Shown: positions 2-57,666, counted from the stretch's first letter. The stretch is 64,000 nucleotides of DNA from Magallana gigas (GCF_963853765.1 NC_088858.1:2418001-2482000), one strand, 5' to 3'. The notes: generated by a model not told the origin, from the sequence alone. Numbers and translations are program-made.

Positions 2-1951
2 CATCAGAAGGTCATCCTGAGCCACCCCCTGTACCGCAGTCAGTCCATGGACACACTGCTCAAGATCAACCGAGAGCCGGTCTACACACCCAAAAGAAGC
101 ATGAGTGAAATGCGGCAGTCAAAGGAGGCTCGACCCAGCGTCCAACAATCCCTCCGCGTGGATGTAGACACAGAAGGTAAAAGTAGTTCCAATAGTTCGC
201 CGGAAATCCACATCACAGCCGATGTGGAGCAGGGCGCCAGTCCGGTGGAGAAGCAGCCGCTGACCCGCCTGGTTCCTCCACCCATTGGAGCGGATGATGA
301 CGATGATACCCCACCCCCGCAACCATCCATCCCTCCCCCACCCCTCGAGTTCAATGACAGTGTAGATGGTACGGTGTCCTCGCCCAGTTCTGCGACTGAA
401 AGGATGCAGTTTTCATCTGTGTTTGATAATCTGAATGAACAAGACAAATTAGACATGATACGTTTATCCTATGAAGACCCGGAAACTAAGCTTAATCCTG
501 AGCTAGATTCCAGTGTAACGGAAGGCAACGAGGCAGCATTAGCAGACGTGTCCTTCAAGTCCGACAGCACGGTCACTGAGGCGGAACCGAAATCACCCAG
601 TCCCATCAAACCGGAACGAAAGAAAAAGAAATCCTCCAGTGAATCTTCCAGTCTGTCTTCCTTTGAGGAATCAGGCGATGGTCAGATGTCTCCAAGAGAC
701 ACCATGCCGGATATAGTGGAGGACCATATATCTGTGTCAATGTCAAAGACGAACAATGCAGCACCAAGTCAAAGTGACTCCGAAGTGTTCGAGGACCTCA
801 TCAGTCCTCAGAAATCAGACAGAAATATACACATATCATCGGACAAAATTCAGTTATCGTCCCTGGATATTACAACCAACAGTGTGGATGATTCAATGGA
901 GTCTCCGAGGGAGGCCAGTAGGACATTAGTGGATTACAGCTTGTCGGACATGGAGGGGACATTCAGGCCCCAGACCCCGGAGGACACACCCTCTGTAGAC
1001 GAGGACGTCATCACTCCTGTACATCTGAAAAAAGGCGAGCTAGAATCCTCCATTCTACGCTACTTCAATGACTCTGGGAACACTTCAACATCCACCGTGG
1101 AGCACCATCAGTCGCAGCAGGGGGATTCCCCAAACACCACCGTCACAAGTGTGGAGTTCAATCTGAACATGAACAACAATAACGATTTATTCTCAACTCC
1201 CTACCCAAAACGGAACACCAAAGAAGGACAAAGCGGAATGTCGTACGACATATCCATGATGGAGCTCAATGACATAGAGAAAAAGTTAAAACAGAATTCT
1301 AGGGGGGCTGTGAAACAGGGTGTGGCGTTCGAGGTTCGTGATGACGTTTTATCGGGTAATACGGTGCTGTCTCGGCTCTCGGAGGATTCCGAGGGGGGTA
1401 ATGTGGCCAGGACTAAATCTTGTGAAGACAACCTGGCAAAGAAAGCTATGTCGGACAGCTCCCTGAGTTGGTCCGGGAAGCGACTAGTCCGCGCCGGGTC
1501 GTTCTCGGAACTTCCGCAGGACGATTCCAGCGACTGGATGGACCATAATTCTATAGACAATGACGAAAGCATCATTTCTCAGGAGGAAGACAAAGAAACG
1601 TTCAACTCATCAGAGGAAAGCCTCAACAGCAATAACAAAAACGGACTGCTGAAGAAAGCCAAGATGTTCGGTGCTCGAGAAAACCTCGCCAATCTGTCTT
1701 CAGACAATTCAGGGTCCCAACAGTCGATACCCGACTCCTGGAGTGGGGAGTCCGGCACTCCACCCCCCTACCTCAGTAAACACAGCGACCAGAACGGGGG
1801 AAACTCCTCGCGCGAGTCCACTCCGGTCAAAACCCCCACAAACATATCTACCTCTAACCTATCACGTGATCCTACATCATCCACCCCCGAGGGAAACGGG
1901 CCGTTCTCTCTTTCAGGGGACATAACTGTGGGCGATGAAGAGGACTGTTAA
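2..1951 (+). CDS. Terminal coding exon (5'-truncated by the window edge) of an unidentified gene; long low-complexity Ser/Asp/Glu/Pro-rich, probably disordered C-terminal tail
   Basis: The frame is open from base 2 (HQKVILSHPLYRSQS then MDTLL...) to TAA at 1949-1951. It is about 50% GC against AT-rich flanks, and an AT-rich 3'UTR follows with AATAAA at 2125, 2506 and 2784. No recognisable folded domain. The ATG at 47 is probably internal. Confidence 0.85.
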   Translation, partial: HQKVILSHPLYRSQSMDTLLKINREPVYTPKRSMSEMRQSKEARPSVQQSLRVDVDTEGKSSSNSSPEIHITADVEQGASPVEKQPLTRLVPPPIGADDDDDTPPPQPSIPPPPLEFNDSVDGTVSSPSSATERMQFSSVFDNLNEQDKLDMIRLSYEDPETKLNPELDSSVTEGNEAALADVSFKSDSTVTEAEPKSPSPIKPERKKKKSSSESSSLSSFEESGDGQMSPRDTMPDIVEDHISVSMSKTNNAAPSQSDSEVFEDLISPQKSDRNIHISSDKIQLSSLDITTNSVDDSMESPREASRTLVDYSLSDMEGTFRPQTPEDTPSVDEDVITPVHLKKGELESSILRYFNDSGNTSTSTVEHHQSQQGDSPNTTVTSVEFNLNMNNNNDLFSTPYPKRNTKEGQSGMSYDISMMELNDIEKKLKQNSRGAVKQGVAFEVRDDVLSGNTVLSRLSEDSEGGNVARTKSCEDNLAKKAMSDSSLSWSGKRLVRAGSFSELPQDDSSDWMDHNSIDNDESIISQEEDKETFNSSEESLNSNNKNGLLKKAKMFGARENLANLSSDNSGSQQSIPDSWSGESGTPPPYLSKHSDQNGGNSSRESTPVKTPTNISTSNLSRDPTSSTPEGNGPFSLSGDITVGDEEDC

Positions 1952-4277
1952 CTTAATTAAGTGTTCCTAATATTCATATCATGTTTAAAAGTTTAGATAG
2001 CTGCAGTTTTAGCGTTTCTTTTATTTATTCAAATTCAACATATCTGGAAAAACTGCGACTTTATGAATTGAAATGTTTTAAGTTTTACCGTGACTTTTTA
2101 AATAGATTGATTTTTGTAATTTTTAATAAACATATCTTATCGTTGTTACAAGCATTTTGAATATTTTACACACTAATTTTTATATTTCACAGTGAATTAT
2201 CGCATATGTTTGGGTATTCCCCTCTGACTCTGTGTATTGCAGTTGTTTCCAGCAAAGGTGCTTTTTAAGATCAAAACAGTTATCGCCCCTTTATTACGCC
2301 AGTAGTTTATGATCAATATATTTTTTATATTCATGTTTATCTTTTTAAGTTTTAAATAACGATTCATATACTTATGCACTGTTTGATTTTGTATAAATTG
2401 AATAATTTTATAGATATATTTTAATAACACACAGTACATGTTTGTATTTCGTCGTCCAATATATGCAATTATCATCCATCTATATCCCTGTAACTATTTA
2501 TTGTAAATAAAAGTAGAAAGAGATTACCGAAAATGAGTTAATGACAAAGTCACTGTGTATCTTTAGCGAATGAGTATCAAGTGCTGCTCTATGTATGTAA
2601 TACATAACACACATCTGTCATGCACGTGAAGTACACGTGTAAAATACACGGTACTCGCGTGTAAATAATAAAAAAAAAGGCTTGGTTTCGGGAAGTGTTC
2701 AATTGTTTATATAATCTTGTACATATGTAATTATTAATATTCATTTGTTTTTATTATACATGTTTTATATATCTATTATTATTAATAAATATACTCAAGT
2801 TCCAATACATTTAATACACGTCTATTAGTTCTTATTAGTTTCTGATAAGATCAGTGTCAGACTGTAGATACTCTGACATTTGGTTGTACTGATCCACGGG
2901 AATCAGGGTAATACACACGTATGTCAGTAGGAAAGATGTTTAAGTGTGTGTGTGTGTCTGTGTCTGTGTGTATATATATTGGAAACTGGTAGACGTCACA
3001 GACAAAAATTAAGACTATTGTCAAGCTAAAAGACAAACAACCATGCAGTGAGTGGACCGACTGTAGAAAAGGAAGTTACTGCAGTAACGATACTTGTTAC
3101 AAAACAAGATGAAAAAAATCTTACTCGTTCTTTAAAGTTCTTTTTAGAAAAACATGAACAAAACGCTGACATGTATGTGAAAGTAGGTATGTTAAAGACC
3201 CTAATAACAGCTCATGTTATGTATAACAACATGAAACATACACATCAAATTTCTCTGACGGCGTGAACATGAAACGTGCTATTCCTTCTCACGAAAATTC
3301 GCAGGATTTACTGCCAAGGTAGTTCCTACTTGGACAAAATTTACGAATTTTCTAGAATTGCCTCGTTATTTCAGAGTCTATTTTTTTAATAAATAAAGAG
3401 TGCTGTCTCTTGCAGAGATTTTTCAGACTTCCATATTTTCATGAACCTCGATTTCTGTAATGGCTGTCAAGGGTTGTCTTTCCCGTTACATATTCATCTA
3501 ACCTAGACTGTCTTTCAATGATTACGTTCATGTTTTTATACATGTCTAATTTAGTTTGCATTTCTTTCCTGTATCAAACATTCACCCTCTTTTTGAAGAG
3601 AAGGGATCCCAGTCTATTGGTGAAGTTTGATGAATCTTACATAGACATATAACAAATATTTGATACATTTTTAAATAAAAACATATTTAATAAATAAATG
3701 CAACAATAAGATACATGTACAAAGTGCTTGTGAAAGACTCTATATTGGGATCGAAAGTTCTGTAAAACAGCCGTAATATACATGTGACACAGTACAGGTG
3801 GGTCTTTAGTTTTTTTCATGACAACATACAGATAGTATTACATGTATACTATACTAAGAAAAAACCAATAAATGATTAATAAGTGTCTGAAATAAAAGCA
3901 AGAATATTTATAATTTTGCCTCTAAATTCCTTTAAACAGTAGTCAGGCCAGTAAAAGGTCATAGAAATACACATATAGAAAGCTAGACTTCACTAATTAT
4001 CTACCTGTCACAATGCCCCTTAGACTAGACAAATATATATAATTGGTACCGGTACATATAATTTGGTGTTATAAAAATATATGTCTGACCCCTGAACCCT
4101 CCTAACCGAACATGCAGGTCATTTATCTCTTTCCCCTCCCACTAAATATTAAAAATAAATGTATAAAACATTACATGTATTTCATAAACTAAAATTTAAA
4201 AAAAAAAAGTAAATTAAAAAATTTAATCTCTGGGATTCCCAATACAAGCATAGCATTATGGCTGGAATAGCACAGCA

Positions 4278-28845: not shown

Positions 28846-30538
28846 TCATCGTGTTATTGGAACCGTTGAGTTTGGCATGCACAGCTCCACATTACACACA
28901 TTGGCGGGACAAAGCCCGCCCGGCTGACAGACGCGCATGCACCACTCGTTCATGCTGGGCATCATTTGGAAAACACCGTTGGCCCTGCACTTTGGCTCTG
29001 CAATGGGCAAATTACACCCACACTCACACATAAAGTCCACGCAACTGTCCTTTTGACAGTGGTCAATGCACCACTGAACTATACCCTCCGTTTCATTGTA
29101 CTGTCCCTTCCCCACACAACGGAATTTCGGTGAAAACACAGTACATTCCTCTGCGGTGGAGGACACTAAAGGTTTGACTGTTGTAGAGGGAGCCACAGTC
29201 GCTGGCTTACGAACAAGGTTCCTCTTGAACACGGGAAAGACGAATGAATCGCCGACAGCATACATGGGACTTTTTCTAGGGGTAGCGACTCGGTCTTTAT
29301 CATTGGTCCGGTCACGTGTCACTTTTATCCGTGATTCGTTAATTCCATCTTCTAACGTTAATTCTATAGCGGGAGGGGGAGGGAGCGGCGCCGTTCTAAG
29401 TATGTCTGGGGGCGGTCTTGTTTGCACTGCTTTAACTGGAGGAGGTGTCTTGGGTTCTTTGGACGGATGGTCATGGATATGTACGTGAGGAGGCTCCATT
29501 TTGGTCATGTTGTCAAGCCACCAAAACGGCGGCTGGTTCAGTTCTGTTGGGGGTTTCCCAAACATTTGATCAATGGGCATAGGGAATGTAAAATTAAACT
29601 CCAGGGGTTCCAGGAATCCATTTGGAATGGTTTGTTTCATTCCTGGACTAATTTTACGTATTTCCTCTTTCAGTATTTCCAGTTCGTCCCTTGTAAGGTT
29701 GTATGTTAGTTCGTGTGGCACTATGTAGATGTTTTCATGTAGTGATAACAATGGACGTTCGAACATTGTATCACTTTGTTTTTTGACAATGGCCACGTCA
29801 GCACAATTATAGAACTGTTCTTGTCTGCCTGACCCCATCTCTGCACAATTGTTAATTCCTCCCATTCTATGTCCTGTAAAACAAAATGAACACATAGTAA
29901 ACGGTTGTCGTTAAATTACTTTTAAGTTTATAATATAATTGACCATTGTTAAACACTTTTTAAAAAAAATTCTCTTATCACTGTAATTTTGCTGTTAAAA
30001 GTTCAGTGTCTAATCTTGCTACCTCTTGCCCACCATATCGTACCTGTACTGTACTTCCACTGTAAAACACAATGCGAGCACACCACATTCTCACTGAGTC
30101 GAACATGGAGATCGAAGAGACCGCCATGACTTCCTACATAGTATCTAAAGTTCCAGGACTCTTCGATCCACAGCAGGTTTTTGTCGAAGCACTCCTGAGT
30201 GAGCGGGGCGTCAGAAGAGTTCCTCTCACAGAGCCGGAACTCGAAATACCCCAGCATGTTGCTCTCCACCTCCACCGTGATGTTGACGTACCCGCCCTCT
30301 ATGTACGTCTTCACAATAATATTGCTGTCGTACACGCCCCCCTCGTCGTGGAGTTGCGGTCCATCCGCAGGGTCGCCACACACGCCGCAGGCGCCATTGT
30401 TTCTCTCCCATTGCCTCTGAAAGAATCAAATACGTATTTTTGATTTATTTTTCATAGTTATGGTTTAACCAAGATACACTGAATGCTTCATATTTTTAAA
30501 GGCAGGCTTATTCATATATCTCTCGCTCATTTTCTCCA

Positions 30539-30579
<41 letters not shown>

Positions 30580-33500
30580 TTAAATGCCATAATAAGTTTA
30601 ATGCAGATTCAGGATTGACACTTAGGTCACAATGCTAAATGCCATCTGATGTATTATCATTTTAATACACCGTCCTTATGAATTAGTTTAGTTGTAATAA
30701 TAACGGCAATTCGAAAGAGGTCACTTACTACTATCTAAAAATGTTAACTTTTGCATTGTTCCTGTACTATTCATTTTTTAGTTATTTAAACTGAAGGGTG
30801 ATTGGACCCAAATGTTCTGGTGAACTGGCAATTCACATTTACGGAAAGAACACCATACAAAGCCAATTAATCAAGCAAAATAAGCACTGATTTATGAATA
30901 TGAATTAACACAGAGGTAAGAACGTCTAGGAATTTATGTCTTCAAAGACATCTTTTAGAAGATTTTTTCTTGCGCATGACACACCTAGGCCTATGGACCA
31001 ACTGGCAAGAAAGCATTCTCTGTCAAAGAGAAACCTAAATATGTCGCCGTTGAGAATATTTAGGACAGAAAGGCCCTGTGACGCTGACTCGTTCAAGAAT
31101 CAAAAATATTGTATGACTTCTTTTATTTTGATTTTTTATCTGAGATGTAGATATTTTTTCGCTGGAAAATGCATTTGAAGGATATTATATTCGGTCGAGG
31201 TGATCTTTTTTTTTTTAGTGTGTTTAAACTAAAAGTTCAATAGTCTAGTCTAATGAAATGCCATTAAAAAATGAAGAGGTCGAAGTATAGGAATAAACGG
31301 TAAAAGGTAAACTTTAAGGAAGTGGTAACAACGTACTGAAAATAACAACCAACTGAAAAGCTAAGTTTATACCAAACCACATCACGTCAGAAGTGTGTTC
31401 ATAAAAACAAATGTATACTCGATGTAGAGAGGACTGGAGGATTGTTGTGGTTGGCTCTTCTGTAAGGTGTAGACATTGTTAATTAATTTATTTAGAATAG
31501 ATTTCATCATTGTCTTTTCCCTTACACCGTATAAATTAGAATCGGGGATTTTCTTAAAAGTGCTTTTCTGGTATGCGTAGCATGTGAAAGTGTTAGGACA
31601 TGTACACAGTGTAACAGGCGGACGACACTTGACAGAGTCCGACGGGAGGCCTGTCTCCATACAACTACGTTGTAGGTCTTTGGATTATTTTGTTGCAACC
31701 TTCATCTACTCTAATAATAAAATGTTGGTTTGGTTAATGTGAAATAATGCTTGTCTACTCCTGCTGTTCCAGCAGTATGGACTAGACTTGTCCTACTCTT
31801 TGGACAAATTCAGTACGCTGTTTCTATTACACCTTACTCAACCTGTCTTGTTATTTTAGGTCACAGGAAAAGGTCAAAGATTAAGGAACGACAACATCGC
31901 AGTCGTATGAAAATTTTCAAATTATTTTACATGTCAAAGCCTAAGGAGGGCGTAGAAAGCGTAAATTTTGGACATTTTTCAAAATTAGGATCATGACCTT
32001 TACATTTATTCAGGTTAAATTTAACTCTAAACCATAGCGGCCACTTCTGATATTTCAGGATATGGACAAAATGCGTCTTTATTTTCATGGATTATATTTG
32101 AAATATTATTAAAGAAAAAATCAAGCATACAAAGTTTTGTTGCCATTAGAATTCAATACCCTTGTAGGTGAACTTCCTAAAAAGATATTAAAATAAACTT
32201 GTTGCACGAACTTAATTTGATATATTCGATGATATATAAGCTGCCATTGATAAATAAATTTTTTGAAATATTTTTAACATTCAGTCGACACAGTGCATCA
32301 TACACTCGATTGTGGAACACAAAAGGGGGTTTATCCAGTCTTAATTGCCAAAAAACAATAATGAGAGGTGTTGCCTAAGACTCATCCATCTTATTCATCC
32401 AAATTTCATTGACTTAAATTCAGAAAATTATCAATATTAGATTTTTCCCAAATCAATAACTAGTTAATCTGTCAGGGCGCGTTGATTGATGAGCGATTCA
32501 GCGCTCTGGCGGGGCTGCCTTTGTCACTCTATGGGAGCTCATTCATTCCTGACTTTGCATGATTTATCGATCACGTCAGACGGATTCAGTTATAACGACG
32601 AATCAATCTTATCAATGTGCATGGATTGATTACAAATCCCTTTCTTTCAAACGAACATGTGTTTTTTGAGATGCTTGATCACTGTAAATGGTCTGTGATA
32701 AGAACCACCGCCGCTTATGACAATTACAAACTATAAAGACCTCTTATGCCATCCAGAAATAGAAAACCATGTTAATTAATGAGGCGAGGAAATAATGAAC
32801 TGTAAAGATGATACAAGTGATAATAAGAGTTTAACTTTTATGGTTGACAGAGCTCAAAAATTCCCCGAAAAAATCACAGGCAGACCCAACAAGAGCAAAA
32901 AAAAAACGTAGTGTATATGTTCAAATTTAAAGACCCTTTCCTTTGATTGACTTGTTGTAATGATGGTTTTAATGATAGAATAAAATAGTTTAATTTTTTT
33001 AACAACGTGATACAAGAGAAAAAGAAAACACGTTTCCTTAATTCCCAGCTTATTTTCTGCATTTTATAACTGCATATTCCTTAATTAATGATTTCATAAC
33101 TGAACCTAATTATGCTTAAATCCTTCAAGTGTTTCACTTTATTCGGAAACATGTGCTTGTATTTTCCATATTGACGTTTTATTTAATGTGGAATTTTTTA
33201 TGGATTTTACATTGTGATAATTAGGAAGAAAAATGTTGATTAGCATTGGTGTTACAAAATCAACATTAAATTATTACTTGTGTAAAACGTCAACTGATTA
33301 AAAGTTAAGATGGCCATCTCACATTATTGTTAAATTGCAGATTTTTGTTCAGAAGAATATTTGTAAAGATAATGCAATTATGAAATTGTACATATCAAAT
33401 TACAAATCATCTTTCCTTTTATATGTTTAAAATAAATGTTCTCGTATAATTGGTGGTATTAACATGCTGCATTATTCAATCAGGTTTAGTTTTGATCAGA

Positions 33501-34772
33501 GTTTGGATAGCATCTCTAGATGTATGCAGTAACAAACTGGTCAATAAGAAATATTGACCATTTCAGTCCAGAATTCAGTTAACCTTGAGAGAAGACAAAG
33601 ATCGGTGTCCGCACGTTCATTGATATTGGTCAACTTCGCCGCTTCAACCTGGCATTCTGTTTTATAAGTATAAAAAAGTCTACAATAGCCCTAGACTATT
33701 ATGTTTTCTCCAAATGTTTGAGTGACCAACAACAAATTATTGAGGGTTTGGTGTGGTTAATTAGACTAATGCAATTAGCGCTGGTCAGTGGAGACCGTCC
33801 TATAAGACATATAATGGTCAACACTGGTCCCTGACCTTCATGTCTGTTTACTTATGTTATTGCAGGCCATGTCAACAGTTGTGTGATGTTTTGATCACTT
33901 TCATACCACTAAATACATGCTTTTTGTAATGTACTGGAATCCATAAAACAGCTGAGTATAAGGTTTTTAAACAACCTTATAAAACTTCTATATGTTTACA
34001 TTTTAGCGTGAAGAATTTTACAGCCTTTTTATTACAAAGTATACTAGCTAATGACTGATATTTATAGTTTTCAGGTTTTAATTAAGGTTGCAGGCACCTA
34101 ACAACCTATTTTGTTTCTAATTAAGTCCAATTAAGTAAAAATACATATGTGTTCCAAGGAAAGTATATTTGTTAACCTCTACTCTCTACAAACTCTGGAA
34201 TCTACAGCCGTACCTTAATCTTATTGAGGAGAGTTGGATGGCAGTGGCCATTTTTAGACTATCTAAATCTCCTTCAAAAGATCTACGGATAAAGATATTG
34301 GAAAAAACAGGAAAAGAAATAGGGATTTTCTTTTACTTAGAAGAAGTTTACATTGCTAAATAAGTCATAGATTTGATGTGATGGGTATTTAGCTGACCAC
34401 AACGCCTCCTTAAGCCACAGATCTTGTGCAACGTCTATTTTCAAACACCAGTGTAATACATGACCGGGTAATTTCAAAGCAAGCCGAGAGTCATGAAAAT
34501 TCCATACAATTGTTTACTTCTAAGGCCAAAAAAAGTTTTGACTTTCGAAAGTTTAGTCAGAGTTTGATTTGTAAACTTACCTCAAACCCCCCACAGTTGA
34601 GGGCACTGTCGTTGATATTTAAAGGAGTTTCGTTACCGAATCTCCACAGAGAACTTCTCTGAGGGGGTTCCAACATCAAAGCTCGCTTCCCGTGCGTCCA
34701 CTTTGGCTGGGCAGAAACGGATCCAAGAAACAGCATCAAGAGGGCACAAGATAGAACACACCGATAGCACAT
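28846..34772 (-). CDS. Secreted AA15-type lytic polysaccharide monooxygenase-like (chitin-binding type-4) protein with a Pro-rich linker and two C-terminal Cys-rich modules; non-canonical copper site; 530 aa, 3 exons
   Basis: Exons 34772-34581, 30416-30044, 29873-28846 (GT-AG, phases 0 and 1). Hydrophobic signal peptide, then EPPQRSSLWRFG..P.N.ND..LNCGGF / RQW..NNG.CGVCGD / GYFEFRLC / LTQECFD / CSHCVLQWKY.TG / QEQFYNCADVAI, which is the AA15 motif series. Confidence 0.9.
30542..30575. repeat. (CT)n microsatellite
   Basis: Direct reading; lies in intron 1 of the LPMO-like gene. Confidence 0.95.
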
Positions 34773-35425
34773 TGTTTCACACCTACTATCGTATATTTAT
34801 AATCCATGGATCCTCACAATGACGTTCTGAAGCTTGCATTTTCACTCCATCTCATGTGTGGAAAACTATTATGAAGGAGCCAGAGTTTTTTCTTATATAA
34901 CACAAAACAGCACGAATCCTCTATTTCCTGTTCTTTGACTCAAAGTTCTTACTGGTGATATTGTAAAGGAAACAAGTTCACGTCCAGATCCAGTTTGCTG
35001 GTTGATCTATTTCCTGTGCTGGTCAGGTGAACACCGATCGCTAACAATTTTCTGCAGTTGGAAAGTTTACTTTAGTGTTTCTGATTTAACATGTAGCCAG
35101 TGACACGGATTTCATTAACCTTAGGTGCCCGATGACAGCAATTCAAAAATGAGTATCAGGCTCGCTGCAGAGCGACTCTTACATTCCTCTAACTCTGAAC
35201 TGATAGTGATAGTGATTTGTTAATTCCTTCATATATATACACGAAATGTCTCTACTGCTTTGTCATCCCTCTTCGTTCGTTTATCACCGCCGGCTTTTGT
35301 GTAGTAAGTATGATGTTCATCATGCATAATTCATTAAACTCTTCAAAAAAAGAAAAATTTGACAGTTGTATTTGGCGTCAGGGCTAATCATGGCTTGACA
35401 AGGTAAAAATATAAGTAGAGAGCCC

Positions 35426-57030: not shown

Positions 57031-57666
57031 ATGGCGGATGTTAGTGGAGCTAAATATTTTGATGCCATTTCCAACAACAAGCGGCAGGAATACAAACTAA
57101 AAGAAGCGGAAGAGAAAATCGACCACTCTAAGCGGCGGATGCTCGTCAAGTTTTGGAAAGAAAAGTACGACCTGATGGACGATTTAGTCTTACTCCACGT
57201 AAAGACCCCGGTGTTCGTGGCTCCGAGCAAAGCGAGCTCTCTGCGCCCTCTGTCCTCCAGCAGGACCCGGATTGAAATCCAAAACGTCTGTCTGGACAGT
57301 AAACTCTTGACCAACAAACCCAGCACTACGGGCCGGAGGCGTCCGGTCTACAGCTCCTCGCCCGTCATCGATATTCAGGGAGAGGACGCGGTGTGTTACC
57401 CTAATAAACAGGCAAAGCACGGGAGAGCCGTCCACATGAACTACCCCCTCCGGAGACGGCTAGAAGTGGCCAAGCAGTTGGAAAAATCGCTCATCACTTT
57501 AGAACTGCGGAAAGATTGCCGGTCTCAGCCTGCTGAGAAATACAACAGGAATACGAGCTGGAATGCACTGCGACCAAAAACGACAGGGAGATTAAGGACG
57601 AGAGGGGAGTTCATCAGTACGGTGACGTACCATAGACCAGAGACCGCCGTCGGATTTTCCAGTTAA
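57031..57666 (+). CDS. Uncharacterised 211-aa basic protein with a predicted N-terminal helical/coiled-coil segment; single coding exon in this window
   Basis: 636-nt ORF forming a GC-rich island in AT-rich DNA, with good start context (ACAATGG) and coding-like third positions. No recognised domain. Confidence 0.7.
   Translation: MADVSGAKYFDAISNNKRQEYKLKEAEEKIDHSKRRMLVKFWKEKYDLMDDLVLLHVKTPVFVAPSKASSLRPLSSSRTRIEIQNVCLDSKLLTNKPSTTGRRRPVYSSSPVIDIQGEDAVCYPNKQAKHGRAVHMNYPLRRRLEVAKQLEKSLITLELRKDCRSQPAEKYNRNTSWNALRPKTTGRLRTRGEFISTVTYHRPETAVGFSS

What the first reader, a model, noticed from the sequence alone, without database searches (positions are those of the whole stretch)
30255..34709. AA15 LPMO-like protein with a dismantled histidine brace
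Known: AA15/AA10 LPMOs need His1 at the mature N-terminus (signal|HGRLxEPP) and a second His in the TANHxGYFEFRLC motif. Seen: the likely signal cleavage (VSA|Q) leaves QPKWTHGKRALMLEPP, so the only His is at +6 and three residues too far from EPP. The second motif reads VESNMLGYFEFRLC (His->Met, codon 30257-30255). The rest of the fold (Cys pattern, QWKY, EQFYNCAD) is intact and the ORF is undisrupted. Inference: not a pseudogene but a non-catalytic or differently metalated LPMO paralogue, for example a chitin-binding matrix or shell protein, or a Cu(I) carrier using Met.
Basis: partly seen in the sequence, partly recalled or inferred. Interest (0 to 1): 0.75.

Follow-up and report, generated by a model that had tools for sequence, protein, structure and literature searches.

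The report
Copper-site-less LPMO-like protein of oysters
This oyster gene encodes a secreted protein that keeps the fold of a copper-dependent chitin-cleaving enzyme (AA15 LPMO) but has lost both copper-holding histidines; it is expressed, strongly conserved, and belongs to a previously undescribed mollusc-wide group of such "dead-site" relatives.

Summary
A three-exon minus-strand gene (34772-28846, 530 aa) is confirmed by spliced RNA contigs from three runs. It encodes a signal peptide, an AA15/LPMO_10 domain, a long linker and a twin six-cysteine C-terminal module. Aligned to the solved AA15 enzyme 5MSZ, the second copper histidine (His91) is Met118. The His1 position is Arg30, with His27 three residues upstream and not at the predicted mature N-terminus.

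It is not a pseudogene. dN is about 0.05 against saturated dS between oyster species, and six of seven RNA/genome differences are synonymous. The AlphaFold model (pLDDT 93) superposes on 5MSZ at TM 0.90.

It is also not a one-off:
- Orthologues in scallops, mussels, pearl oysters, clams and unionids all carry Arg/Lys at the His1 position and Leu/Met/Tyr/Phe at the His91 position.
- About 12 of about 36 AA15-like loci in this genome lack the second histidine, as do 28 of the 150 closest cluster representatives; all of the 20 His-less representatives whose source I looked up are molluscan.
- A single origin of the His-less state is not rejected.

Met118 and His27 occur only in oysters, so a Met-based copper site is unlikely. 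The best reading is a copper-free pseudo-LPMO, probably chitin-associated, analogous to the fungal histidine-brace-less AA9 protein LsAA9B.

The parts
34581..34772 (-). Exon 1 (codons 1-64): start codon, signal peptide, N-terminal extension, start of the LPMO-like domain
   Evidence: The exon 1/exon 2 joint 30416/34581 is seen in RNA contigs of 3 runs.
34710..34772 (-). Predicted signal peptide (residues 1-21, ending VSA)
   Evidence: Read from the sequence: one basic residue, a 13-residue hydrophobic core, then V at -3 and A at -1. This is inferred by the (-3,-1) rule; no SignalP run was available.
34686..34709 (-). Eight-residue N-terminal extension QPKWTHGK holding His27. It has been seen only in oysters so far.
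   Evidence: P0224-P0226 are identical here and P0227 reads QPKWTHGQ. It is absent from scallop, mussel, Pinctada and clam orthologues. The first 5 residues have pLDDT below 50.
34683..34685 (-). Arg30 codon, at the canonical His1 position (six residues before the PP of EPP)
   Evidence: Alignment to 5MSZ. In alignment A1 this position is R in 0.73 of the 11 orthologue-group rows (K in two mussel rows, S in one unionid copy) and H in 0.95 of the histidine-bearing relatives.
30417..34580 (-). Intron 1 (4164 bases, GT..AG), containing a (GA)n microsatellite at about 30531-30585
30044..30416 (-). Exon 2 (codons 65-188 plus one base): core of the LPMO-like domain
30255..30257 (-). Met118 codon, at the position of the second copper ligand (His91 of 5MSZ)
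   Evidence: Met is kept in two other oyster species. Other bivalves have Leu/Tyr/Phe/Thr here.
29874..30043 (-). Intron 2 (170 bases, GT..AG)
28846..29873 (-). Exon 3: end of the LPMO-like domain, linker, C-terminal module and stop codon
29812..29814 (-). Phe209 codon, aligned with the axial Tyr184 of 5MSZ. The second-sphere Q206-E207 just before it is retained.
29152..29772 (-). Linker (residues 223-429): a block conserved among oysters, a short His-rich stretch (HVHIHDH, 29467-29487) and Pro-rich segments
   Evidence: No Pfam family.
28849..29151 (-). C-terminal module of two six-cysteine repeats (C-X15-C-X3-C-...-C-X4-C...)
   Evidence: An HMM of this module hits the C-termini of both canonical and His-less AA15 proteins; alignment A2. 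The same motif is described for insect LPMO15-1 (PMC9156745). AF2 pLDDT 80. Its only fold matches are the C-termini of other chitin-binding type-4 proteins and one GH18 protein; none in the PDB.

Best explanation
The locus is a functional, expressed gene for a secreted 530-residue protein. Its N-terminal domain is a structurally intact AA15 LPMO fold in which the copper histidine brace has been replaced. The His1 position holds Arg30, which is not at the predicted mature N-terminus. The His91 position holds Met118, and the apical Ala89 position holds Ser116.

It is the oyster member of an orthologue group found throughout the Bivalvia. That group sits in a mollusc-wide clade of AA15-like proteins without the histidine brace, which may have a single origin.

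Inferred: without the brace the protein cannot bind copper in the LPMO manner or cleave polysaccharide oxidatively. It most likely acts as a non-catalytic binder or organiser of chitin, through the retained LPMO surface and the twin six-Cys module it shares with chitin-active AA15 and GH18 proteins, in a chitinous extracellular matrix such as shell or periostracum.
For: Shown:
- Gene model and expression: the spliced joints are in RNA contigs from 3 runs, and RNA-labelled runs from several studies hold 0.83-0.86 of the sampled words.
- Family and fold: Pfam LPMO_10 at E 1.8e-14. AF2 model pLDDT 93.2 and pTM 0.89. Foldseek to 5MSZ gives TM 0.90/0.93, rmsd 1.4 A and 41% identity.
- Active-site residues: Met118 aligns with His91, the His1 position is Arg30, and Phe209 aligns with Tyr184.
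- Selection: for exon 2 against two other oyster species, dN is 0.047-0.057 with dS 2.4 or saturated. RNA differs from the genome at 6 synonymous sites and 1 non-synonymous site.
- Orthologues: proteins of Ylistrum, Pecten, Argopecten, Mytilus, Pinctada, Mercenaria and Potamilus show [KR]A[LIM]M.EPP at the N-terminus. These, together with Mactra and Sinanodonta (whose records lack the N-terminus), show SN[LMYF]LGY at the second-histidine position and carry the same C-terminal module.
- Coupled loss: of 141 near-complete relatives, 111 have both His, 28 have neither and 2 have only the second.
- Phylogeny, with the trait columns left out: the His-less state needs 3 changes, and one clade holds 33 rows. 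A tree forcing all 37 His-less rows together has the higher likelihood, p-AU 0.73.
- Own genome: about 12 of about 36 AA15-like loci lack the second His.
- Context from papers: LPMO_10-domain proteins occur in the oyster shell proteome and mantle (PMC11464482; bioRxiv 2026.05.15.723513).
Against: - No biochemical data exist. Copper binding, chitin binding and activity are all inferred from sequence.
- The true mature N-terminus is unknown.
- The tissue of expression could not be read because run metadata are coded.
- As I recall it (the paper was not held), no polysaccharide binding was found for the closest functional analogue, the fungal protein LsAA9B. Chitin binding by the LPMO-like domain itself is therefore not assured.
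- Support for the large His-less clade is moderate (SH-aLRT 69), and the group was defined after the tree had been seen.
- The second-sphere Gln206-Glu207 remain conserved, which could point to a residual or different chemistry.
Confidence: 0.7

Rival explanations
1. The protein is differently metalated: a new Cu(I) or other metal site built from Met118, His27 and nearby residues (His179, His190) makes it a metal carrier or a redox protein.
For: Met is a classical Cu(I) ligand. Oysters carry Met118, His27, His179 and His190. Met118 and the QPKWTHG stretch are kept in other oysters. Two further His-less lineages also have Met at this position: own-genome C1:70.02M, and Batillaria P0170 / Mizuhopecten P0206.
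Against: Position 118 is Leu in scallops, mussels, Pinctada and some unionids, Tyr or Phe in heterodont clams, and Thr in some unionids. His27 is absent outside oysters, and its segment is predicted disordered. The conserved replacements are Arg/Lys and a hydrophobic residue, which fill a site rather than ligate a metal. Residue distances could not be measured because no coordinates are returned.
Confidence: 0.07
2. The AA15 fold has been re-used for something unrelated to chitin, such as protein-protein recognition, immune pattern recognition or signalling. The CWR-1 LPMO of Neurospora is described as having such a 'moonlighting' allorecognition function.
For: The whole domain is strongly conserved although catalysis is lost. 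The His-less clade has expanded into many paralogues, 12 loci in this genome. There are clade-specific switches away from the copper site: L141F, Q179H and N190Y/H. The CWR-1 precedent is cited in PMC9545521.
Against: The C-terminal twin six-Cys module travels otherwise with chitin-active domains, namely canonical AA15 and a GH18 protein. LPMO_10 proteins are recorded in oyster shell and mantle, though it is not shown that they include this one.
Confidence: 0.18
3. The N-terminal extension is a prohormone-type cassette. After signal cleavage, QPKWTH-G-KR would be cut at the dibasic site and amidated. That would release a small pGlu...His-amide peptide and leave a mature pseudo-LPMO starting at Ala31.
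For: In this species and its closest relatives the sequence fits signal peptide | Gln ... Gly-Lys-Arg. The same idea was noted independently on this window (s1-388652). The segment is predicted disordered.
Against: In another oyster (P0227, 84% identical) the motif reads G-Q-R, which has no dibasic site and no basic residue at P4, P6 or P8. Non-oyster orthologues have no such cassette. An LPMO-fold protein would be an unprecedented peptide precursor. There is no peptidomic evidence.
Confidence: 0.04
4. It is a decaying or recently inactivated LPMO gene (a pseudogene in the making), or processing exposes His27 and it is still an enzyme.
For: Both catalytic histidines are missing from their positions, and the domain has an odd number of cysteines.
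Against: The ORF is intact, spliced and expressed. dN/dS is about 0.02 or lower. The same substitutions are conserved in pteriomorph, heterodont and unionid bivalves and in gastropods. The model is of high confidence. A start at His27 would need cleavage after K-W-T, which fits the (-3,-1) rule poorly. It would still leave no second His and a three-residue register shift.
Confidence: 0.01

Closest known systems
AA15 lytic polysaccharide monooxygenases (TdAA15A, PDB 5MSZ; Sabbadin et al. 2018, PMC5823890)
   Same: The fold is the same (TM 0.90, rmsd 1.4 A, 41% identity) and Pfam assigns LPMO_10. Eight invariant cysteines, the CGxCGD, FEFRLC and LQW motifs and the QE before the axial residue are kept. 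Both are secreted.
   Different: His1 is Arg30 and not N-terminal, His91 is Met118 and Ala89 is Ser116. One disulfide pair is lost in oysters. The protein is therefore expected to have no histidine-brace copper and no oxidative activity.
Insect group I LPMO15-1 (TcLPMO15-1 / LmLPMO15-1; Qu et al. 2022, PMC9156745)
   Same: The architecture is the same: signal peptide, AA15 domain, a C-terminal stretch, and two six-cysteine repeats of the C-X15-C-X3-C... type.
   Different: The insect proteins keep the histidine brace and are needed for cuticle chitin turnover. Here the brace is gone, the linker is longer (about 200 residues), and the spacing of the later cysteines differs.
LsAA9B, the fungal AA9 member without a histidine brace (Frandsen et al. 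2019, as cited in PMC10354095). That its N-terminal His is replaced by Arg ('Arg-AA9') is my own recollection; the paper was not held.
   Same: It is an LPMO-fold protein of a bona fide LPMO family that has lost the histidine brace, forms a conserved subgroup and has no known function. As I recall it, Arg takes the His1 position there too. In many His-less molluscan members Arg directly follows the predicted signal-peptide cut.
   Different: It belongs to a different family (AA9, fungal), so the resemblance would be convergent. In the oyster protein the Arg is preceded by an eight-residue extension. LsAA9B carries a phosphoserine near the N-terminus (PMC10354095); nothing comparable is known here.
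X325/Bim1 LPMO-like copper proteins (reviewed in PMC10952591)
   Same: They are LPMO-like folds with a non-LPMO function.
   Different: X325/Bim1 keep the histidine brace and bind copper. This protein lacks it.

Membership tests
AA15 LPMO (catalytic enzyme) | AA15/LPMO_10 beta-sandwich fold | tested here: met
   Pfam PF03067 at E 1.8e-14 over residues 33-215. AF2 pLDDT 93.2. 5MSZ TM 0.90/0.93.
AA15 LPMO (catalytic enzyme) | His1 as the first residue of the mature protein, directly after the signal peptide | tested here: not met
   The His1 position is Arg30. His27 lies 3 residues upstream and 5 residues after the predicted VSA|Q cut. The cleavage site is inferred, not measured.
AA15 LPMO (catalytic enzyme) | Second copper-ligand histidine (His91 of TdAA15A) | tested here: not met
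   Met118 aligns with His91. This position is H in all histidine-bearing relatives of alignment A1.
AA15 LPMO (catalytic enzyme) | Axial Tyr/Phe and apical Ala (Tyr184, Ala89) | tested here: inconclusive
   Phe209 aligns with Tyr184, and Phe is also the majority residue (0.97) in the histidine-bearing relatives of A1. The Ala89 position is Ser116 (A in 0.76 of those relatives).
AA15 LPMO (catalytic enzyme) | Copper binding and oxidative cleavage of chitin or cellulose | not testable with these tools
   Needs ICP-MS or EPR and product analysis.
Group I LPMO15-1-type architecture | Signal peptide + AA15 domain + C-terminal stretch with two six-cysteine repeats | tested here: met
   with the motif as described in PMC9156745. 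Orthology to the insect group I was not tested.
Mollusc His-less AA15-like clade (proposed here) | Arg/Lys or another non-His residue at the His1 position together with a non-His residue at the His91 position, grouping together in a tree built without those columns | tested here: met
   Nearest rows are P0185, P0006, P0186 and P0004 (path length 0.74-0.76).
Neuropeptide precursor | Signal peptide followed by peptide-Gly-dibasic site, conserved among relatives | tested here: inconclusive
   The motif is present here (QPKWTH-G-KR), but it reads G-Q-R in P0227 and is absent outside oysters.

The most novel reading that the evidence does not exclude
Molluscs carry an ancient, possibly single-origin subfamily of copper-free AA15 pseudo-LPMOs. 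In it the N-terminal histidine was replaced mostly by arginine, which as I recall is also the case in the fungal AA9 protein LsAA9B and would then be convergent. The subfamily has radiated to about a third of the AA15-like loci in this oyster genome. On this reading it has a new, selected function in building or remodelling chitin-based matrices such as shell, distinct from oxidative cleavage.
Probability: 0.4. Interest if true: 0.7.

Novelty: new variant of a known kind. Interest (0 to 1): 0.6.

Why it matters
LPMOs are defined by the histidine brace, and AA15 is the animal family. I found no paper describing AA15 members without the brace.

A conserved clade that keeps the fold under strong purifying selection while discarding both copper ligands shows that the AA15 scaffold has a second, non-oxidative use in animals. 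In this oyster that clade makes up about a third of the AA15-like loci.

Two practical consequences follow:
- Counting 'LPMO genes' from Pfam or CAZy domain hits overstates oxidative capacity in molluscs.
- The clade gives a natural, testable set of proteins for asking what the LPMO surface does without copper, with possible relevance to chitin scaffolding in shell formation.

If my recollection of Arg at the N-terminus of the fungal AA9 protein LsAA9B is right, the resemblance suggests a recurrent evolutionary route out of catalysis.

Tried and rejected
- Alternative first exon or upstream in-frame start: none in three transcript contigs, and an in-frame stop lies 10 codons upstream of the ATG.
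- Pseudogene: rejected on selection and expression.
- Tandem paralogue inside the window: none (tblastn).
- Neighbouring long ORFs (47-1951, 57031-57666): no Pfam family.
- C-terminal module: no Pfam hit. The ESM Atlas feature search gave only a 0.76 score to an unnamed haptophyte cluster, which is not meaningful. Foldseek against the PDB gave nothing.
- The search for homologous proteins with the scallop orthologue returned no full-length orthologue of this gene from any oyster; the only oyster row, Saccostrea P0211, belongs to a different His-less lineage. The oyster comparison therefore rests on ORF-level Logan contigs. Exon 1 of the two divergent oyster species was not recovered.
- Statistical test of coupled loss of the two histidines: only 2-3 independent contrasts, so no significance is possible.
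- Frandsen et al. 2019 (the AA9 member lacking the histidine brace) is not held. Details about it come from a citing paper and my own memory.
- The search of earlier findings near the locus returned nothing.
- Residue-to-residue distances around the former copper site could not be measured because model coordinates are not returned.
- No SignalP was available, so the cleavage site is inferred.


Full report
**Gene and observation**

The region holds a minus-strand gene with three exons: 34772-34581, 30416-30044 and 29873-28846. Both introns are GT..AG, and the product is 530 residues. Logan RNA contigs from three runs carry exactly the predicted joints, 29872/30043 and 30416/34581, and run on upstream of the ATG without any other coding exon. 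RNA-labelled runs from several studies hold 0.83-0.86 of the sampled words of exons 2-3, which is what loss of the 170-base intron predicts. An in-frame stop lies 10 codons upstream of the ATG.

Gln22 begins at 34709 and the Met118 codon is 30257-30255.

**Family, fold and the copper site**

Residues 33-215 match Pfam LPMO_10 at E 1.8e-14. The only solved relative found by sequence is the AA15 enzyme TdAA15A (5MSZ). The alignments to it give these correspondences:

| 5MSZ residue | This protein |
|---|---|
| His91 (copper ligand) | Met118 |
| V6-P7-P8 | E35-P36-P37, so the His1 position is Arg30 and His27 is three residues too far upstream |
| Tyr184 (axial) | Phe209 |

The roles of His1, His91, Ala89 and Tyr184 are those given in PMC5823890.

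The N-terminus has a typical signal peptide ending VSA|Q. By the (-3,-1) rule a cut before His27 (K-W-T|H) is unlikely; this is inference, since no predictor was available.

An AlphaFold2 model of the mature domain, built with a 63-row alignment, has pLDDT 93.2 and pTM 0.89. Only the first five residues (QPKWT) are disordered. The model superposes on 5MSZ with TM 0.90/0.93 and rmsd 1.4 A. The fold is therefore intact while the brace is gone.

**Not a pseudogene**

- ORF-level contigs from two other, quite divergent oyster species keep exon 2 at 89% amino-acid identity, including ESNMLGY. Exon 3 (the end of the domain, the linker and the C-terminal module) is only 59-67% identical.
- Pairwise dN for exon 2 is 0.047-0.057, with dS 2.4 or saturated. 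Omega is therefore about 0.02 or less.
- Seven differences between the RNA contigs and the genome comprise six synonymous changes and one non-synonymous change, M501T.
- Exon 1 from another oyster (P0227, 84% identical) reads QPKWTHGQRALLLEPP.

**Not a one-off**

An exhaustive HMMER search with exon 2 found 1521 relatives at E of 0.001 or better. The nine closest proteins all lack the second histidine. Together with further hits from a search started from the scallop orthologue, the orthologue group includes:

- Pteriomorphia: Ylistrum balloti, Pecten maximus, Argopecten irradians, four Mytilus species and Pinctada imbricata
- Heterodonta: Mactra antiquata and Mercenaria mercenaria
- Unionids: Sinanodonta woodiana and Potamilus streckersoni

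Where the N-terminus is recorded, these proteins share [KR]A[LIM]M.EPP, with Arg/Lys at the His1 position. All share SN[LMYF]LGY at the second-histidine position and the same C-terminal module.

Among 141 near-complete relatives, 111 have both histidines and 28 have neither. Two have only the second histidine, and one of those is an alignment slip. All 20 His-less cluster representatives whose source I looked up are bivalves or gastropods.

I built a tree of 166 domains with the trait's own columns removed.

- The His-less state needs only three changes, and 33 rows form one clade with SH-aLRT 69.
- A search that forces all 37 His-less rows together finds a tree with higher likelihood, +35.5 and p-AU 0.73.
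- A single ancient loss is therefore compatible with the data.
- The group was defined after the tree had been seen.
- There are only 2-3 independent contrasts, so the coupling of the two losses cannot be tested statistically.

**Census of this genome**

The genome is 564 Mb, and the scan holds notes on 10 of its pieces. One of its paralogues falls in a 90%-identity cluster with a Crassostrea (Magallana) angulata protein.

I counted about 36 AA15-like loci. About 24 are canonical, with HG directly after the signal peptide and an xxH motif at the second-ligand position. Twelve lack the second histidine:

- this gene
- C1:15.14M, C1:23.96M, C1:45.69M, C1:45.72M, C1:70.02M, C1:74.77M and C1:75.27M
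- C3:7.44M, C3:41.995M and C3:42.00M
- C5:18.61M

For seven of the eleven other loci exon 1 could be read, and in each the His1 position is also non-His (Arg, Tyr, Gln, Asn or Gly).

In many His-less members from this and other molluscs the Arg directly follows the predicted signal-peptide cut, for example ...VWG|RARL and ...AEG|RARL. As I recall it, this matches the fungal AA9 protein LsAA9B. PMC10354095 confirms only that LsAA9B lacks the brace; that its N-terminal His is replaced by Arg is my recollection, because the paper is not held.

**C-terminal module**

Residues 430-530 form two six-cysteine repeats beginning C-X15-C-X3-C. An HMM built from the orthologues finds the same unit, in one to six copies, at the C-termini of many canonical AA15 proteins. 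The motif matches the 'two 6-cysteine internal repeats' described for insect group I LPMO15-1, which is required for cuticle chitin turnover (PMC9156745).

The module has no Pfam family and no PDB fold match. In AlphaFold DB it matches only the C-termini of other chitin-binding type-4 proteins and one GH18 protein. Its company suggests chitin targeting, but this is inferred and not shown.

**Mechanism**

Shown: the gene is secreted-type, expressed, strongly constrained and AA15-folded, and it lacks both copper ligands.

Inferred: it has no histidine-brace copper and no oxidative cleavage. It acts as a non-catalytic, probably chitin-associated protein.

Position 118 is Leu, Tyr, Phe or Thr outside oysters, and His27 is found only in oysters and lies in a disordered segment.

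Clade-specific switches are H30R, G31A, L33M, A116S, H118L/M, L141F, Q179H and N190Y/H. The retained second-sphere Q206-E207 remains unexplained.

LPMO_10-domain proteins are reported in the oyster shell proteome and in mantle cell types (PMC11464482; bioRxiv 2026.05.15.723513). I could not tie those reports to this gene.

**The N-terminal extension**

Another note on this window (s1-388652) reads QPKWTH-G-KR as a neuropeptide-like cassette. The motif is real here. In P0227 the dibasic site is G-Q-R, and other bivalves have no such extension. I give this reading about 4%.

**Novelty**

Four full-text searches found no description of AA15 members lacking the histidine brace. The concept of a pseudo-LPMO exists for AA9. 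I therefore rate this a new variant of a known kind, of moderate to good interest. The value lies less in this single gene than in the conserved mollusc-wide clade it reveals.

Noticed in passing
window 34683-34709 (-): The eight residues after the signal peptide plus Arg30 read Q-PKWTH-G-KR. Formally this is a prohormone-type cassette: pGlu start, Gly amidation donor, dibasic site. It is conserved in the closest oysters but reads G-Q-R in P0227. It was also noted as s1-388652.
   Followed up: partly
window 34807-34739 (-), 5' UTR: An upstream ATG at 34807 opens a 23-codon out-of-frame uORF that overlaps the main start codon. Several shorter uORFs lie further upstream (35184, 35115, 35092, 34855, 34850, 34839), if the 5' UTR is collinear with the genome there.
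   Followed up: no
window 30531-30585: A (GA)n microsatellite of about 55 bases in intron 1. The read tool skipped it as a repeat.
   Followed up: no
window 33400-33906: Inside intron 1, one 154-base contig of run X7 (33753-33906) and a single read pair of raw-read RNA run X21 (33400-33800) map apart from the gene's exons. This could be a separate small transcript, a transposon fragment or retained intron.
   Followed up: no
window 29467-29487 (-); L026 about 2900-3000: The linker has a short His-rich stretch (HVHIHDH). In one other oyster species it is expanded to about 21 residues of alternating His/Asp/Thr (HHDHTHHDH...). This may be a metal- or mineral-binding patch in the linker.
   Followed up: no
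window 29827-29847 (-): In oysters the last loop of the domain reads C-A-E-M-G-S-G where scallop, mussel and Pinctada orthologues read C-x-C-M-G-C-G. The domain is left with 9 cysteines, so Cys198 may be unpaired.
   Followed up: partly
G000:C2:37.34-37.39 Mb (L054-L057): A tandem cluster of about six canonical AA15 genes (EPHGYMIDPP ... TA[SYF]H) with split exon structure. One copy in L057 has an in-frame stop (SDG*YE) and is probably a pseudogene.
   Followed up: partly
G000:C1:74.77 Mb and C1:75.27 Mb (L045, L048): Two almost identical His-less AA15-like genes (Gln at the His1 position, Lys at the His91 position, and a long insert in the domain) lie about 0.5 Mb apart, suggesting a recent segmental duplication.
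   Followed up: no
window 47-1951 (+) and 57031-57666 (+): Long ORFs of 634 and 211 codons with no Pfam family. They were not examined further.
   Followed up: partly
window 30273-30284 and 30210-30221 (-): Two N-glycosylation sequons (N109-I-T and N130-S-S) recur in the bivalve orthologues whose sequences were printed (N[IV]T and NS[ST]). The canonical own-genome paralogues printed mostly lack them.
   Followed up: no
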